A DNA stretch of 64,000 nucleotides from Salpingoeca rosetta (lineage: Eukaryota > Protista > Choanoflagellata), in the NCBI GenBank assembly GCA_033442325.1, contig JAWQFM010000014.1:1630721-1694720 (forward strand). The letters are read 5' to 3'. The notes beneath the pieces are model-generated. The model saw only the letters and a program-made list of their open reading frames with translations. It was not told the origin of the DNA and searched no databases. Positions 39,479 through 56,374 of this stretch are shown in pieces. Position 1 is the stretch's first letter. Every line of letters begins with the position of its first letter. The position numbers were made by a program, and so were the translations under genes.

Positions 39479-42737
<3,259 letters not shown>

Positions 42738-43439
42738 TCACAACGATGATTGATAATGTGTCGACGTGTCATGCATGTCATGTCTTCTTCTTGAACCACG
42801 AACCAGCACCACCTTTCTGACCTTCTTCTGCATACGTACCTTTGTCTGTCGTGTCGCCGTTAGTACAATGTAAACATCATGAAATGTAGCGAATGCTCAA
42901 ACCAAAAAAGGCACGCAGCCAACCAACAACCAAAAGCAACACACCCCACCCACTCCTGCTTTCATCCCATCATCACACATCACACATCCCCTTATCTCCC
43001 TCTCCTCACTCCCTCTCTCTTGCTTGTCTTCGTCGGCAAGAGCAGCGGTGGCAACGCACACACGCGGGCGATCCAAGGCGCTGACACACACCCACACACA
43101 CACACACAGCATCAGATCACATCACACACGGCCAACACACTCGCGCGTGCAACTGCCAAACATTACGGCGTCCCAGCTTTTTTTGTGGGTTGTGCTTGAT
43201 CTCCAACACTCAAACACACACACACACACACACACCCGACGCACGCAGACGCAAACACACGAGCCAGCCAGCAGCTGCCAATCAATCAGCCCTTGCTTGC
43301 CACTTGATTGTTCTGAGGCGGCTCGCGCATTTACATTCAGCACGCAGCTCGTGTACCGTCACAGCGCCTGCCTTCACCTCCTGCTTGTCTGCGTGACTGC
43401 TGAGAGGACTCACAGCACTGTCGCTGCACATACGCACGT

Positions 43440-45322: not shown

Positions 45323-48300
45323 TTAGGAGGCGGAGTTGCCGTGCTTCTTCTTGGCCAGACGCAGAAGCTTGATTGCCTTTCCTACCTTGACGCCGGCCTC
45401 GATGAGCATCTGCTTGGTTAGGTCGCCGTCAGTCGCTGCCTCTACCAAGTCCTCCAGCGTATCGATGCCGTGCTCTACCAGGGCGGACTCGACGTGCGGC
45501 AGCAGCGAGTGGCGGTTGAGCCATTGAATCAACTCGGGCTCAAATGAGCTTGAGGACGAGGGAGACAACGGGGTGGCAGTTGGTGGTGTAACAGGGGTGA
45601 TAGCGGTGGAGATCGAGGACGAAGATGACTGCACGGCAGACAAGTTAGAGGGGTGGAGTGAGACACAGCACGCGTGCCAAGTGGAAGGCGTGGGTCATGG
45701 GTGCATGGGTGCATGTGTGCACGAACACACACACACACACATGCACAAAAAACTATACCTGCGAGGAACTAGATGCAGTTGTTGGTCCCTGCGCTGCTTG
45801 CTGCTTGCTCCTGGCAGAGACGACGACCTGGCGCACCTTCTCCGCAATGTCGCGCAGCTGCGACGTGCGGTCCACAGTGGCATCCATCGCAACCACGGCG
45901 TCAATGTCAAACAGCGATAGCACCACTTCACGCACGCTTTTGTGCTGCTGGGGTGGTGGCAGGTGCAGTACCTGTGATAAGAACTGGTCGAGCTCTGCCG
46001 CCGTGTTCTTGCTCACAACATCCGGCAACTTCGTTGCCAGCCGCTTCAGGCGGTCAAACGAGTCGTACTCGCTCACTTCCGCCGCGCTCATAACATGGTG
46101 GTTGCTGTCGTGCCAGCCACTGCCAACGAAGAGCGGGACGATGCGGCGAAGGCGGATGTTGTCTGGATGCTGGCGAGCAAGCTGCTGCAGCTCCAGCATG
46201 GCCATCCACTCCAACAGCACGTTATCGCACGTGTCAGTGTGGCCGAGCGAGCGCATCTGATGGATGGCACCGACGGAGACGACGGGGCAGGCGACAGTAC
46301 TGTTGTGCAGGGCTGTCATGCACGCGTGCTTGAAGTTGACGCCTGTCTCCAAGTTGTTGGCGTCCACAAAGGTCACCAGTCCGTGCTGGTCCAACTTAGG
46401 GTACAATGTCATCACCAGGCCTCGGTTGCCGCGTTGCCTGTGACGTGGTGGTGAATATCGAAATGAGAAAGGAAGAGAGGGGCAAGGAAAGACACACAGT
46501 TCGCACCGTACACACATACACACACACACACACAAGTCTCACCGGTAGCTGATGAAGGCATCGTATTTGTCCTGCTGACCCATAACTGGCAAGAGTGGAC
46601 CATACTTGGCGACCAGATCCCCTGGTGACAGCAGGTGTGAGCGGCCAACGCGAAGCGCTTTCTTGTTCATGTGGTGGGTGTGCACGTCCTCGAAGAACAG
46701 CAGTCTCGTGTCATTCAATGGCAGCAGCAAGGTGGCCTTGAGCTCGGGGTAGCGCTGCGTGACAGCTGTTGTGATGGTGTCGTGCAGCATGTGCAGCAGT
46801 GTGCGAGGACGTGCAGTCATGATCTTGATCTTGATGCCACCAACAGCCGGCACGAGCTGCATCTCGATCTCAGCAGCATCCATGAAGATCACGGCGTCTG
46901 TGCGGCTCAACATGGGCGGTTCCGTTGCACCGTGCTGCATGTGTGCCATCACGCATGCCAGCACCATCGGGAACAGGCCCTCTGGCAGGAAAGAGGCTTG
47001 CTGCGTGTCTGCAATCTTGACGCTCACACCGCTCTTGAGCTCCCTCAGGCTGAAGGCGACATACGCGGTCTTTTCTTCATATCCAACATATGGATTGGCC
47101 TGCTGTGCTGCTGCCGTGCTCAGCGTGACCGACGAGGACGCCTGTTCATCCTCCAGCGTCATCGGCAGGATGGCTGGGACGAGGTACTGTTGGTGGTGGT
47201 GGTGTTGCTGTTGAGGGCTGGACAGCAGCACCATTGGCGCCGTGTACTGGATACACAACCCGTACTCCATCATGAGTTGGAGAAAGGGCTCAACCATGCC
47301 ACCTTCCAAGTCCCTCCACAGCACATCAAGTAGACGGCGGTGCAGGATGCCGCAGTCAACCAGGTCATCCCACAGCTGCGCGCCAATGGCCCTTGCCTCG
47401 CCATCACGCACGTCGTGGTGCAGGTCAAAGTTACGGATGACGCGGGTCATTGTGTCCACCGCCCACGGCGGACTCAGGATCACATAGTCTTCCATGCCTG
47501 GCACACTGTCGTAGTACAGCACCATGGAGTACAAGTGCAGGAACTGAAGGCAGGCTCTCGTCTCCTGACGTGTACGCAGCCCACATGTGCGTGCAATATC
47601 CACGACCTCGTCAAACGTGAGCAGTGGTCGCTTCTCGTTGCGGGCAATGGCGTTGAGCTTGTCGTAGAGGTGGAGGTACGGCACAGCCACCTCCTGGCTC
47701 ACGTACTCCTGCGCCAGTGCTGTGGAGGAGATGGTTTGGCGCAGGTCCTGGATCATGGGATCATGGATGGACTGGGTGTTGTCGACGGGCCAGAACCACA
47801 GACCATGCTTTTCGTTGTGGATGACGCCAGGGAAAGCGGGGTTGTGGCGCAGGCGGCTGTAGATGCCACGCGAGATGTTCTCGTGCTGTTTCCGCTGACT
47901 AACCACATCAGCGAAGGTGCCGACGATGAGGACGGGTGCGCCCTTGGCGTGGAGGTGGAGGGAGGAGAGCCAGTGCTCCATAAACTCCCACGATTCAGCC
48001 CGCTTGCTCTTGTCTTGGTGCAGCAGATCCTCCATTGAGAACACCAGCAGGTACACCGCGTACCTGGTGGGTGGGATGCGGGTGTATGGAAGGAAGGTGT
48101 GGGTGGGTGAGTCGGGTGAGGAGGGGCTGGGAGGAGTGGAAGTGGGGTGAAGGGAAACATGCAAGCATACTGACGCACACACACACACAGTGACTCACTT
48201 GGTGAGGAAGAAAGGGTGGAAGATGTAGAAGGTAGACTGGCCGCCCAGGTCAAAGATCTTGAACGTGACCCGCGCTTTGCCCTCGCCCATGACCGCGTCC

Positions 48301-48754
48301 ACGTTGAACTCCTTGATGGCTTTCTCCATTTCCTCCGTCGACATGCCGGTCGTGGCGGTGGCGGTGGCGGTGTTATCACGGGCAGCAGCATCACTTTGGC
48401 TCGAAGGGTTCAGGGTGGCATGCTTCTTGGATGCAGATGCTGAGTCATGAGATGCCTTGGTGGGTTTGGGGACAGTCGATGGCGACGTGTGTGAGGATGG
48501 ACGTGGCCGCGTCTCCTTTGCATTCTGTAACTGCTTCTGCTTCAGCTTGGCAGCCGCTGCCTTCTGTGCCTTATCAGATTCCTGCTGTCGCTGCTGCTGT
48601 TGGTGTTGGGCGATGCGGCTCTCCATGTCCTCTTTCGCCTTCATCATCGCCTGCTTCATTTGTAAGTCCACGCCGGATTCCTGCGCCAGCGCCGTGCCGC
48701 AGAGGCTGCGCATCAGCTCCGAGATCTCCGCATCCAGCTCCTGCAAAGGTTGTG

Positions 48755-48850
<96 letters not shown>

Positions 48851-49841
48851 TGAGGGGATGATCGTGTCAACCACCACCTCTTTTCACACCCAGGCGTCGC
48901 ACACATCACATGCTCGCACCAGACAAGGGTACACACCTGCCAGTCGTGAACGTCCATGGACTCGACGATAACGGCGAGGTCAGTTGTGGCGGCGCCATGC
49001 GTGGAGTGCTCGTGTTTGTTGAACATGTGACCCATGAGCGAGTGGAACGTGGAAGTCTTGCCGGCGCGCCCCTGACCGATGAAGATGAGCTTGGCCCTGC
49101 CCGCCATAGTCGCGTTGAAGCGCGCAATGATCTCTCGCATGCGCTGCTGGAGACGCTCCCTGCGCGCCTGCTCGGGCTGCTGCTGCTGGTGGCGGTGGTG
49201 ACGGTTGTGTGAGACATCATGATTATGCTTGATACGAGACCACGGAGAGCGTGATGAAGGAATGGCATGGGTGACGTGATGCATTTGCTTGTGCGTCGCT
49301 GGCAAGCACTTGTCAAATCACTCACGTCTTGCGCTGCTTGTTCTTCTTGCTTCGGTCCGGCGGCAGGAGTGGGCGCAGGTGGCTCTTGTTTTGGCTGCTG
49401 TTGCTGTTGTGGTTGCTCCGAAGGCTTGCCGCCTGGCTTCAGCCCTTGGATGCTGGTGATGGCAGTATGACCGCTGGCTTGTGCCACATCATAGGGCGTC
49501 TCTCCCTGCGTGTGTTGAAAAGGTAAAACGCATGAGTTGAGGAAGGAGGGAAGCAGGGAGAGGGGAAGGACACAGCGCAAAGCAAAGAAGCAGTTGTGTC
49601 ACGTCTTCAGAAACAGCAACACGACGCGAAGCACACCTTCTTGTTCTTGACGGCAGTGTCTGCGCCCTTCTTCAGGAGTAGCTCCACGACGGCGGGCTGG
49701 TTGTGCCTGCAGGCAACGTGCAGTGGCGTGTCGCCCTGTGGATGGGTGGGGGCAGCAAGGGGCATGGCATGTGTGGTGAGGATCTGTTTGAAACGAACAC
49801 ACGGCCGGTGCAACCATGAGCGAGCGCCGTCACACACAAGC

Positions 49842-49886
<45 letters not shown>

Positions 49887-52101
49887 GACCTGTTGGTTGA
49901 TGTCTGTATTGTCCTGCTCGATGAGGGACGTGACAGCGGGAGCGTCGCCATCCCTGCAGGCGGCAAACAGTTGCTCATGCTGCCGCTTCTTCTCCGCGCG
50001 TGCTTCGTTAAAGGCGGTCTCGCCCTCATCGTCGCCACTCCTGTGATCTCACGCGACATTGGACGCAAGCACCACGCAGCGTGTGTGTGTGTGTGTGAGG
50101 TGAAGGCTAAAGCAGGGAGCAAACGACTAGAGTGGAAGCACATGTTGACTGACCAACTCCCTGTGTTGAGTTTTCGGTCGACGGGCAGCGCGGCACCAAA
50201 GGCGCGGGCGGTGGCGGTGGAGTTCTTCTCGATGCTGAACGAGGACACGTGGTGGTAGCGTGTGGTTGGGAACAAGCAGCAAGTGCGGTGTGTGCGTCAG
50301 GAGGGTTGGTGGTTAGGGTTGTGGAGAAATGCAAGCAAGCAGAGAGGAACACACAGTGTGGCGTGCACTCAAAGAGTGGTGATTGGTCACACAAATCCAC
50401 AACAGGACACAGGCGTTCATGAGGCAGGCGCAACGCAATCGACGTACTCAAGCCGAGACAGCGTGCGGTTTTGGTCCAGTGCGGCACCCAGCGCCGCACC
50501 GCCAACCGGGGTGATGGAGTTGTTATCCAAGCTGCAAGTGGCAAGAAATGCATGTTGGAAGAGCAGGGGAACGGGTGGGCAAGCAACAATTGTCAGTGTC
50601 ATGGATGAAAGTGGGTTGCAGATGGATCACGTGCACGTGTACTCGCTCGCACATCAGGTCCTACGACATTGAAGTCACAATGGCGGAAGCAAAGGGGGCA
50701 AATGCAAATTGCACAGGATGTCGCCCTATCCGCGTCGCTCCGCCCTCGACACAACACCTATGTATCCATAAACCTGGTCGCTTTGTAACACTTCGGGAAG
50801 TGAGGTATGCTCATGCCATGATAAGGCTACCATCGGAGAAATTCTTCGCCAACGCCACAGCGCCTCATCGCGGATGGAATTGTTGTACAGGCTGTCAAGA
50901 CGGTATGGTGGATGCCACACAGGGCGATGATGCCACATGGATGAGGAAGAGTGAGTGCGTGCGTGATGATGATTGTTGTGGGTGGCAACACAGTCATCAA
51001 CCACACATGTGCACGTGGTTAGGTGCAACGGCAGTGACGCAGCCCACATGTGTGTGTGCGTGTACACACTCACTAGAGTTCTTTGAGGGCCGTGTTGTGC
51101 TTCAACATCTCCGCCAACGCCACGGCGCCCTCAGGACCGATGGAATTGCCATACAGGCTGTCAAGAGGTATGATGCCACACAGGGCGATGATGCCACATG
51201 GGTGAGGAAGAGTGCGTGCGTGAGTGCGTGATGATGATTGCTGTGGGTGGCAACACAGTCGTTGAACCCCACCCCATCAACCACACATGTGCAAGTGATA
51301 AGGTGCAACCGCAGTGACGCAGCATACATGTGTGTGTGTGTGTGCGTGTCCACACTCACTTGAGTTCTTCGAGGGCCGTGTTGTGCTTCAGCATCTCCGC
51401 CAACGCCACAGCGCCCTCAGGGCCGATAGAGTTGCCTGCCAGGCTGTGCAGACACACACGAAACGCGGGGAGCGAAGGTGAACAGACGTCCAAACATGCG
51501 CCAGCAGGAGAGGAGAAAGGGGTGCAACACGCAACACCGCCACCCCAATCAACCATGCATGTCACACGATGCAGATTCATCATCACCACGCACTAGAGTC
51601 GTTTGAGGCAGGTGTTGTCCTTGAGCGCCTCTGCCACCGCACGCGCCCCAATGACGCCGAGGCCATCACCACCCAAGCTGTAATTCCAAATGGTGTGTGT
51701 CATGAAATGAGCAAGAAGACTGAGGATCGAGAGAGCAAAAACATGAGGGTGCCAGTCACAACCTGCCACAACCACACATAGTGTGTCCAGGCGGTGCGAG
51801 GGGACAGGACACGCACATGTGAACACCCAACAGCAAGCTACACCACGCTCATTGCAACACGAGGACAATCGAAGCAGAGAGAGAGGGGGGAGAATCAGCA
51901 CAAGCACAACCACAAGAGTCCTTGTGTCCAACACATGCATGTTCCAACATGTCGTTTTGGTTGCTTTTGCACTCACCTCACATAGTCCCCACACGTGTTG
52001 TTGGCGATGGCCCTGATCTCTTCCTTCACCCCATCCTTCACCTTCGTCTGCGCCAGCAACGCCTCCACCTCCCTCCTCGCTCTCTTCTCTTCGCCGAACA
52101 T
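45323..52101 (-). CDS. Roco-family protein LRR-ANK-Roc-COR-TIR-SAM (no kinase domain)
   Basis: ATG at 52101. RI-type LRR exons (LxxNxIGPEGAVALAEMLKHNTALxEL). Ankyrin repeats (GDTPLHVACRHNQPAVVELLLKKGAD). Roc motifs KLIFIGQGRAGKTS, FDLGGQSTFYIFHPFFL, PVLIVGTFAD. COR (LQFLHLYSMVLYY, YLVPAILP, FLPEGLFPMVL). TIR (YDAFISYR...FVDANNLETG...CDNVLLEW...IVPLF). SAM (LIQWLNRHSL...EHGIDTLEDL...LIEAGVKVGKAIKLL). Stop at 45323-45325. Confidence 0.9.
50846..50891 (-). pseudogene. Decayed LRR pseudo-exon
   Basis: Intact acceptor, then LYNNSIRDE followed by a 1-nt deletion (gaggcgct vs gagggcgct). Truncated after ~46 nt, with no matching donor. Confidence 0.75.
50846..51443 (-). repeat. Tandem duplication of LRR exon plus intron units (~270-290 bp)
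   Basis: Introns 50892-51073 and 51158-51359 are closely similar; exons 51074-51157 and 51360-51443 are near-identical. Confidence 0.9.
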
Positions 52102-54642: not shown

Positions 54643-54742
54643 NNNNNNNNNNNNNNNNNNNNNNNNNNNNNNNNNNNNNNNNNNNNNNNNNNNNNNNNNN
54701 NNNNNNNNNNNNNNNNNNNNNNNNNNNNNNNNNNNNNNNNNN
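54643..54742. other. Assembly gap (100 N)
   Basis: Run of N. Confidence 1.
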
Positions 54743-54861
<119 letters not shown>

Positions 54862-55078: not shown

Positions 55079-56294
55079 ATGCAACAGCCAGCGGCCTCAC
55101 CACAGCAGCAACAGAGAGCACAACCGCGCCAACTACACTCGCCAAGTGAGAGCCAGAAGGGACCTTGCCATCACAGCCGGTACGAGCAAGAACAGCGATC
55201 CCAACGCACAAGTGCTCTGGGCCAGCCCCCTCAAGCGACTGCCATGATCCGCTCGTACAAGCGGTTCAACGAGTTCCTCGACGGGAAGAAGGCACGCGAG
55301 GAGAGCCGTAAAGGAAAGCGTCTCTCCGGGTACAAGCTTCAAAGGCAACTCGGACAAGGCGCCTTTGCCAAGGTCGTTCAAGGCCGGCACTCCATGACTG
55401 GAGGTGAGCAAGACGATATGGCACACGCACACACGCGCGCGCAAAAGATACTGCCACAGACATAATACAAACACATGCACACACGTACGCACAGACACAA
55501 GTGAACCCCACAAATACAGCATACGTGCACAGACACATGCGCGCGCACATGCATACATAAACACGTACACACCCTCGCACGTGCACTCATGGCTACATGT
55601 GTTTGCGCTGTTCGTGTGCTGTATGTCACCACGAATTGTTGCAGATGATGTCGCGATCAAGCGGATCTTGAAGCCGTACTCCAACGATGCTGCCCGCACC
55701 ATCATGAATGAAATCTACCTCATGGCCAGGCTCAACCACCCAAACCTCGTCTTTCTCTACCAGGTGCGTGTGCATGCGGCCATGGTCTGATGTGTGCAAT
55801 TGTCGTGCGCTTCCTCTCACGACCGGACATCAACCCTTTGTTCTTCCTTGCTTTCCAGGTGGTGGACACGCCGGCAGAGACAGCGCTCGTGCTGGAGCTT
55901 GGCAAACTTGGCACCTTGAACGAGCATCTGGAAAGAGGTGAATATGCAAACAACACTACAGCACTGCCCAGCACCTGTACGCACGCCCTCCCAGCGAACG
56001 GCTCGCAAACACCTTCATTCGCACACACACACACGCACATATGCACACGCACACGTATATTTACACGCACACACGCACATTTATACTGACACACACACAC
56101 TCTCTCTCTCTCTATCAACATGCGTATACGTGCGTCGTCTTGGTTGTGTGCTGTTGCCAGGCATAGACGGTCCTCTAGTCACGAACATTCTCAGGCAAGT
56201 GATGGATGGCGTTCGACACATGCACACTCTTGGCATTGCTCACCGTGACATCAAGGCGGATAACGTGTTCATGGCCACCCCAACCAGACCGCTG

Positions 56295-56374
<80 letters not shown>

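What the first reader, a model, noticed from the sequence alone, without database searches (positions are those of the whole stretch)
46090..46575. TIR domain retains the catalytic glutamate position
Seen: KYDAFISYR|QRGNRGLVMTLYPKLDQHGLVTFVDANNLETG...HTDTCDNVLLEWMAMLEL...IVPLF. By eye this aligns with the SARM1-type pattern DVFISYRR...VFIDVEKLEAG...CKDWVHKEI...IVPI. The Glu (GAG at 46209-46211) sits at the position of the NADase catalytic residue. Inference: an enzymatically active TIR rather than a scaffold TIR.
Basis: partly seen in the sequence, partly recalled or inferred. Interest (0 to 1): 0.7.

Follow-up and report, generated by a model that had tools for sequence, protein, structure and literature searches.

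The report
Enzyme-type TIR domain of choanoflagellate Roco gene
This is the TIR domain of a large GTPase-switch protein of the choanoflagellate Salpingoeca rosetta. It keeps the NAD-cleaving catalytic glutamate, but an 88%-identical sister gene was already shown in a 2026 preprint to make cyclic ADP-ribose through that same residue, so the reading is right and mostly known.

Summary
The quoted peptide is real and lies on the minus strand. A 105-nt GT..AG intron (46438-46542) splits it after ISYR. GAG at 46209-46211 encodes E1174 of the annotated Salpingoeca rosetta protein PTSG_12317 (UniProt F2UAG1, 1425 aa, 14 exons: LRR-ANK-Roc-COR-TIR-SAM-like).

The spliced domain passes both Pfam TIR thresholds. 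Its AlphaFold2 model (pLDDT 93.8) matches human SARM1 TIR over all 140 residues (Z 14.2, rmsd 2.3 A) and plant RUN1 TIR (Z 15.9). A 50-sequence family profile aligns the LLEW Glu onto SARM1 E642 with posterior about 0.9.

That Glu is present in 146 of 149 distant cluster representatives and 24 of 25 S. rosetta paralogues. The second Glu six residues later is poorly conserved.

A bioRxiv preprint (10.64898/2026.04.20.719644, Table S4) expressed the TIR of the paralogue F2UB80, which is 88% identical here. It lists residue 1118, the same alignment column, as catalytic, and scores the domain active and cADPR-producing.

This copy itself is untested, and an immune role is inferred. It is not a SARM1 orthologue.

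The scan had already reached the same conclusion on several sister genes of this genome.

The parts
45326..52101 (-). Coding region of S. rosetta PTSG_12317 (F2UAG1, 1425 aa), 14 exons: LRR - ANK - Roc - COR-A/COR-B - TIR - SAM-like
   Evidence: Exact mapping of P0152 onto the window; Pfam domains; accessions.
50150..51679 (-). Five LRR exons of about 84 nt, one RI-type repeat each (51679-51596, 51442-51362, 51156-51076, 50530-50450, 50233-50150)
   Evidence: Exon mapping; LRR_6 hits, E 2.8e-14.
49637..50036 (-). Ankyrin-repeat exons (aa 183-267)
   Evidence: Ank_2, residues 205-283, E 1.3e-11; exon mapping.
48198..49185 (-). Exons 10-11: Roc GTPase, with P-loop GQGRAGKTS and DLGGQ
   Evidence: Roc hits; sequence.
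46543..48062 (-). Exon 12 (aa 592-1098): end of Roc, COR-A (720-890), COR-B (947-1042) and TIR strand betaA (KYDAFISYR, 46543-46568)
   Evidence: COR-A E 3e-17 and COR-B E 4e-4; model strand at residues 6-11.
46438..46542 (-). Intron of 105 nt, GT..AG, phase 2, with a (TG)n tract. It splits the TIR after ISYR.
   Evidence: Sequence; same position in 20 paralogues; spliced out in P0152.
45759..46437 (-). Exon 13 (aa 1099-1324): TIR from alphaA to alphaE (to about 45798), then a short linker
   Evidence: Translation; 100% identical to P0152 1099-1324; AF2 model and fold matches.
46209..46211 (-). GAG = E1174, the predicted catalytic glutamate (motif D-N-V-L-L-E-W, first turn of alphaC)
   Evidence: Aligned to SARM1 E642; present in 146 of 149 distant representatives and 24 of 25 paralogues; same column as F2UB80 residue 1118.
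46191..46193 (-). GAG = E1180 (in MLEL), the alternative Glu considered and rejected as the catalytic residue
   Evidence: Only a negative-scoring fragment paired it with the L6 Glu. It is conserved in only 82 of 150 representatives and 14 of 25 paralogues.
45629..45758 (-). Intron of 130 nt, GT..AG, phase 0
   Evidence: Sequence; P0152 mapping.
45326..45628 (-). Exon 14 (aa 1325-1425): Ser/Thr/Pro-rich linker and C-terminal SAM-like domain; stop codon at 45323-45325
   Evidence: SAM_2 scores 20.7 bits on the ORF and 20.1 bits on P0152:1300-1425, against a cut-off of 20.5, so the hit is borderline.

Best explanation
The stretch encodes the TIR domain (aa 1090 to about 1311) of the S. rosetta Roco protein PTSG_12317. 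It is an enzyme-type TIR, and E1174 in the first turn of helix alphaC is the catalytic glutamate that attacks NAD+.

By analogy with its 88%-identical paralogue F2UB80, the isolated domain should cleave NAD+ and release canonical cyclic ADP-ribose. This is inferred.

In the full protein, TIR activity is probably held off until the protein self-associates. The LRR/ankyrin end would be the sensing or binding part, the Roc-COR GTPase the switch and dimeriser, and the C-terminal SAM-like domain a further oligomerisation module that brings TIR domains together to form composite active sites. All of these steps are inferred.

What is shown: the gene structure, the TIR fold, the position and conservation of the Glu, and the activity of a paralogue in E. 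coli (published). What is inferred: activity of this copy, how it is activated, and any role in defence.
For: Sequence and splicing.

Pfam thresholds are passed on the spliced domain.

A profile search of PDB sequences finds SARM1 TIR at E 8e-9, with the family's Glu aligned to E642 at posterior class 9.

The AF2 model has pLDDT 93.8 and pTM 0.91, with alphaC at residues 85-102. All top Foldseek hits are TIR domains. VIA-align gives Z 15.9 to RUN1, Z 14.2 with rmsd 2.3 A over 140 of 140 residues to SARM1, and Z 13.6 with rmsd 2.0 A to AbTir.

Conservation of the Glu: 146 of 149 distant representatives and 24 of 25 paralogues.

The published assay of F2UB80 lists catalytic residue 1118 with 'Active' and 'cADPR' both marked yes. 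P0154 is F2UB80, and it is 88% identical to this TIR in the same register.

Roc and COR domains are present and the P-loop is intact.
Against: This copy was never assayed. It differs from F2UB80 at 27 of 230 positions.

In the preprint's Table S4 many TIRs that carry the Glu have no 'Active' entry, so the Glu is necessary but not sufficient.

The aromatic residue four positions before the Glu in SARM1 (W638) is Asn here.

No expression, GTPase, oligomerisation or infection data were available. The SAM hit is borderline.

No residue-level 3D superposition could be printed with these tools, so equivalence of the Glu rests on the profile alignment, the secondary structure and the preprint's TM-align call on the paralogue.
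Confidence: 0.8

Rival explanations
1. The TIR is an NAD+-depleting executioner like SARM1 (killing the cell by NAD+ loss) rather than a producer of a cADPR signal.
For: The betaA-alphaC motifs are SARM1-like, with 24% identity over the full SARM1 TIR. A related TIR of the same 'LxEW' family from Guillardia theta (L1IYH1) is marked as depleting NAD+ in Table S4.
Against: The NAD+-depletion column is empty for the S. rosetta paralogue F2UB80 in Table S4. The preprint states that most of its cADPR-making TIRs did not deplete NAD+ even after overnight expression.
Confidence: 0.2
2. The TIR is a scaffold only: the Glu is kept for structural reasons and the domain signals by protein-protein contacts.
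For: Many Glu-bearing animal TIRs in Table S4 have no activity recorded. W638 of SARM1 is not conserved.
Against: The 88%-identical paralogue is active, and the preprint states this depends on the Glu. The Glu and its neighbours D, L and W are nearly invariant at 22-40% overall identity.
Confidence: 0.1
3. This copy is a decaying, non-functional member of a large recently duplicated family.
For: There are more than 40 paralogous TIR loci, some up to 98% identical. A few are truncated or carry a stop. One paralogue has Gln and one has Met at the Glu position.
Against: All 14 exons are open and match the annotated protein exactly. Every conserved TIR position checked is retained.
Confidence: 0.05

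Closest known systems
S. rosetta PTSG_12359 / UniProt F2UB80 TIR (assayed in bioRxiv 10.64898/2026.04.20.719644)
   Same: Same gene family and the same LRR-ANK-Roc-COR-TIR architecture class. It is 88% identical over the 230-aa TIR, with the same intron position and an identical HTDTCDNVLLEWMAMLELQQLARQH stretch. The listed catalytic residue 1118 falls in the same column as E1174.
   Different: It is a different locus (contig C13 versus C14 of the assembly). There are 27 substitutions in the TIR. The proteins are 1352 and 1425 aa long. This copy has not been assayed.
Human SARM1 TIR (for example PDB 6o0q, 6o0u; catalytic E642)
   Same: Same fold: Z 14.2, rmsd 2.3 A, all 140 residues aligned, 24% identity. 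The motifs (D)xFISYR, FxD..xLExG and S.GA(L/I) are shared, and the Glu lies in alphaC. A SAM domain sits in the same protein.
   Different: This is not an orthologue. The architecture is LRR-ANK-Roc-COR-TIR-SAM rather than ARM-SAM-SAM-TIR. The alphaD region is about 85 residues longer. W638 is replaced by Asn, and a conserved Trp follows the Glu instead.
Plant TIR domains of TNL receptors (RUN1, RPV1, RPP1, L6)
   Same: These give the best structural scores (Z 15.9-14.0, 157-166 residues aligned), because the long alphaD region is also matched. They have a catalytic Glu in alphaC and sit on a switch NTPase with LRRs.
   Different: In plants the switch is an NB-ARC STAND ATPase, not a Roc-COR GTPase. 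In plants the TIR is N-terminal. Sequence identity is 14-18%.
LRR-ROCO candidate immune receptors of brown algae, and TPR-ROCO-TIR of Chondrus crispus (PMC11378527)
   Same: LRR-Roc-COR core, one LRR per exon, and a large family. ROCO-TIR fusions are reported in other eukaryotes.
   Different: Brown-algal LRR exons are 72 nt and those proteins lack a TIR. Here the LRR exons are about 84 nt and the protein ends in TIR plus a SAM-like domain.

Membership tests
TIR domain (Pfam PF13676 TIR_2 / PF01582 TIR) | Score above the curated Pfam threshold | tested here: met
   On P0152:1086-1315, TIR_2 scores 31.8 bits (cut-off 28) and TIR scores 24.8 bits (cut-off 21.3). Exon 13 alone, which lacks betaA, fell short at 24.0 bits.
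TIR domain (Pfam PF13676 TIR_2 / PF01582 TIR) | Flavodoxin-like five-strand alpha/beta TIR fold | tested here: met
   The AF2 model has pLDDT 93.8. All of the top 50 Foldseek hits are TIR domains. VIA-align gives Z 12-16 to TIR structures, covering them fully.
Enzymatic (NAD+-cleaving) TIR | Glutamate at the alphaC catalytic position (SARM1 E642, ThsB E85, RUN1 E100) | tested here: met
   The profile alignment puts the Glu on SARM1 E642 with posterior class 9. The Glu lies in the first turn of alphaC. It is in the same column as F2UB80 residue 1118, which the preprint assigned by TM-align to ThsB E85.
Enzymatic (NAD+-cleaving) TIR | Glu-dependent NAD+ cleavage or cADPR production | not testable with these tools
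   Published only for the 88%-identical paralogue F2UB80. Not measured for this copy.
SARM1 orthologues | ARM - SAM - SAM - TIR architecture | tested here: not met
   Pfam finds LRR, ANK, Roc, COR-A and COR-B before the TIR, one borderline SAM after it, and no ARM.
ROCO proteins | Roc GTPase immediately followed by COR | tested here: met
   Roc E 9e-17, COR-A E 3e-17, COR-B E 4e-4, in that order. The P-loop and DxxGQ motifs are present.
LRRK-type kinases (the UniRef name 'non-specific serine/threonine protein kinase') | Protein kinase domain | tested here: not met
   No kinase family appears among the 16 Pfam hits at E <= 0.01 on P0152. The database name looks like a carry-over from Roc-COR similarity.
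NLR / STAND immune receptors | NACHT or NB-ARC STAND NTPase | tested here: not met
   No such domain is found in P0152. The switch module is Roc-COR.

The most novel reading that the evidence does not exclude
The family of more than 40 LRR/ANK-Roc-COR-TIR(-SAM) genes could be a choanoflagellate innate-immune receptor repertoire analogous to plant TNLs. It would be built on a Roco GTPase switch instead of a STAND ATPase. Exon-modular LRRs would sense a pathogen cue, GTP-dependent Roc-COR and SAM assembly would switch on the TIR, and cADPR would act as second messenger to an unknown effector. That would place enzymatic TIR signalling in the closest unicellular relatives of animals.
Probability: 0.35. 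Interest if true: 0.7.

Novelty: new member of a known kind. Interest (0 to 1): 0.3.

Why it matters
The finding adds one more intact, Glu-bearing copy to a family whose TIR activity has just been demonstrated. It supports the view that NAD+-processing TIR enzymes coupled to sensor and switch modules existed before animals.

The open questions concern the family rather than this residue: what activates these Roco-TIR proteins, what reads cADPR in a choanoflagellate, and why the genome keeps more than 40 copies. S. rosetta is genetically tractable, so these questions can be tested.

Tried and rejected
1. phmmer of exon 13 alone against PDB sequences found no TIR.

2. A profile of 26 paralogous exon-13 translations, without betaA, gave only E about 0.5 hits to Hydra TRR2 and flax L6. 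It also gave a negative-scoring fragment (-1.9 bits) that paired the L6 catalytic Glu with E1180 rather than E1174. That alternative was rejected after the betaA-containing profile aligned E1174 to SARM1 E642 and after conservation counts.

3. I looked for an intron-less paralogue that would give a contiguous TIR by reference. All 20 loci keep the intron. L010 reads through its intron without a stop, but I did not use it once the public spliced protein was in hand.

4. I built no joined exon model myself. Exons were searched separately by reference. The spliced sequence used for Pfam, alignment and folding is the public protein P0152 returned.

5. tblastn mapping of P0152 missed most short exons, so I replaced it with exact peptide matching.

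6. PF27087, listed among the precomputed domains of these proteins, is not in the local Pfam library, so it remains unidentified.

7. F2UAG1 does not occur in the held text of the preprint's supplementary tables, three of which were cut when stored.

8. I suspected a PARP-like tail in P0002, but Pfam does not support it.

9. SARM1 orthology and the kinase annotation were considered and rejected.

Full report
WHAT IS THERE

The region lies in a eukaryotic, intron-rich gene on the minus strand. Translation of 46544-48188 ends in ...GQQDKYDAFISYR. After a 105-nt intron (46438-46542; GT..AG, phase 2, with a (TG)n tract) the next exon (46437-45759) continues QRGNRGLVMTLYPKLDQHGLVTFVDANNLETG...HTDTCDNVLLEWMAMLEL...IVPLF.

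A second intron (45629-45758) leads to a last exon, 45628-45326, with a SAM-like domain and the stop codon.

The assembly is 55.4 Mb in 68 contigs. All close database proteins are Salpingoeca rosetta PTSG_* entries.

The window's own product is P0152, which is PTSG_12317, XP_004994017.1 and UniRef100_F2UAG1, 1425 aa long. Exact peptide matching places its 14 exons at 52101-45326.

Pfam on P0152 finds, in order:
- LRR_6
- ankyrin repeats
- Roc (E 9e-17)
- COR-A (E 3e-17)
- COR-B
- TIR_2 and TIR

A borderline SAM_2 hit lies at the C-terminus (20.7 and 20.1 bits against a cut-off of 20.5). There is no kinase domain, so the UniRef name 'non-specific serine/threonine protein kinase' is not supported.

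Exons were searched separately by reference, and the spliced sequence used below is the public record returned.

IS IT A TIR, AND WHERE IS THE GLU?

Exon 13 alone lacks strand betaA. It scored just under the Pfam threshold (TIR_2 24 bits) and found nothing in the PDB by phmmer. With betaA included (P0152:1086-1315), both TIR models pass their thresholds: 31.8 against 28 bits, and 24.8 against 21.3 bits.

A library-wide HMMER search with a paralogue profile found 740 proteins at E <= 1e-3. From these and the paralogues I aligned 50 full domains, 22-87% identical to the query (A2).

The A2 profile hits solved TIR chains: L7 at E 5e-9, SARM1 at E 8e-9 and Roq1 at E 1e-8. The printed alignment to SARM1 pairs D-n-v-L-l-E-W with D-W-V-H-K-E-I, so the family's Glu falls on SARM1 E642. 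The posterior class at that column is 9.

AlphaFold2 with A2 gave a confident model, with pLDDT 93.8 and pTM 0.91:
- betaA at residues 6-11
- alphaA at 14-30
- alphaB at 48-57
- betaC at 59-66
- a short helix at 68-78
- alphaC at 85-102

The Glu is model residue 89, in the first turn of alphaC.

All top Foldseek hits are TIR domains. VIA-align gives:
- RUN1: Z 15.9, 166 residues aligned
- C. elegans TIR-1: Z 14.2
- human SARM1 TIR: Z 14.2, rmsd 2.3 A, all 140 residues aligned (561-700 on model residues 5-219), 24% identity
- AbTir: Z 13.6, rmsd 2.0 A

The tools do not print residue-level 3D equivalences. The Glu assignment therefore rests on the profile alignment, the secondary structure, conservation, and the published call on the paralogue described below.

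WHICH GLU?

An early, weak profile without betaA produced a negative-scoring fragment that paired the L6 catalytic Glu with the second Glu, E1180 in MLEL. Conservation settles the question:

| Residue | 50%-identity cluster representatives from other organisms | S. rosetta paralogues |
|---|---|---|
| E1174 | Glu in 146 of 149 | Glu in 24 of 25 |
| E1180 | Glu in 82 of 150 | Glu in 14 of 25 |

D1169, L1172 and W1175 are equally constrained, which gives a family motif D-N-x-L-x-E-W.

PUBLISHED EVIDENCE

Its text reports cADPR-producing TIRs outside Metazoa, including one from S. rosetta. It states that in all cases a point mutation of the catalytic glutamate abolished cADPR production. The Figure 3 legend lists LRR, Roc and COR among the domain architectures.

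Table S4 row 33 gives the following for F2UB80_1:
- S. rosetta protein of 1352 aa
- TIR at 1034-1255
- catalytic residue 1118
- Active: yes
- cADPR: yes
- NAD+-depletion column empty

F2UB80 is P0154/PTSG_12359, the paralogue at contig C13 (locus L016). Its exon translation in alignment A1 reads the same, by eye, as the ordered construct.

BLASTP of the two TIRs gives 203 of 230 identities (88%), with no gap before the Glu. Position 89 of both segments is the Glu, and 1030 + 88 = 1118. The preprint assigned that residue by TM-align to ThsB E85.

It has not been tested for this copy. The same table shows many Glu-bearing TIRs with no activity recorded, so the strong argument for this copy is its 88% identity to an active one, not the Glu alone.

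CONTEXT AND LIKELY MECHANISM

The genome holds at least 46 matches to this TIR, from 33% to 98% identity. All 20 examined share the intron after ISYR. Of 26 annotated S. rosetta relatives, most carry LRR, ANK, Roc and COR.

The likely logic, inferred by analogy with SARM1, plant TNLs and ROCO proteins, is as follows. The repeat end binds a cue or a partner. Roc-COR acts as a nucleotide-dependent switch and dimeriser. The SAM-like tail adds oligomerisation. The clustered TIRs then form active sites that turn NAD+ into cADPR.

A role in defence is plausible. LRR-ROCO families with one LRR per exon are regarded as candidate immune receptors in brown algae, and ROCO-TIR fusions exist in red algae (PMC11378527). 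That role is untested here.

The gene is not a SARM1 orthologue and not an NLR.

NOVELTY

The protein is annotated, the family's TIR activity is published, and earlier follow-ups of this scan reached the same conclusion on sister genes. This is therefore one more member of a known kind, and interest is low to moderate.

Noticed in passing
P0172 (PTSG_12997; not in the window): A 2282-aa paralogue whose precomputed domains include a PARP catalytic domain (PF00644) has Gln instead of the catalytic Glu (NVLLQW). This is a naturally Glu-less TIR next to another NAD+-using domain.
   Followed up: partly
L029:1588-2031 (G000:C4:1058497-1058919): A divergent paralogue has Met at the Glu position (AVLLMW). 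A second divergent copy, L030, keeps the Glu (ELLLEW).
   Followed up: no
L010:1153-3414 (minus strand): In the paralogue on contig C23 the intron after ISYR has no stop and keeps the frame, giving a 753-aa open frame through COR, the intron and the TIR. Intron retention there would insert about 38 residues between betaA and alphaA.
   Followed up: no
window 50150-51679: Five consecutive exons of about 84 nt each encode one RI-type leucine-rich repeat. This resembles the one-LRR-per-exon ROCO genes of brown algae, which use 72-nt exons.
   Followed up: partly
window 45326-52101 (database annotation of P0152): UniRef names this protein and most of its paralogues 'non-specific serine/threonine protein kinase', although Pfam finds no kinase domain. 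The name is probably carried over from LRRK-type Roc-COR similarity.
   Followed up: yes
window about 42000-42400 and about 54650-54750: Runs of N (seen as X in translations) are flanked by (CA)n/(TG)n tracts. Nearly every intron in the window carries such a dinucleotide repeat.
   Followed up: no
window 39479-42750 (plus strand): A multi-exon DnaJ/Hsp40-type gene (J-domain motif HPDK, cysteine-rich zinc-finger repeats) lies downstream of the Roco gene.
   Followed up: no
window about 55200-56300 (plus strand): Exons of a protein-kinase gene (GQGAFAKV... and HRDIKADN motifs) lie upstream of the Roco gene.
   Followed up: no
P0152 and its paralogues (precomputed domain list): A Pfam accession, PF27087, is listed for most family members but is absent from the local Pfam copy. 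What it covers is unknown.
   Followed up: partly
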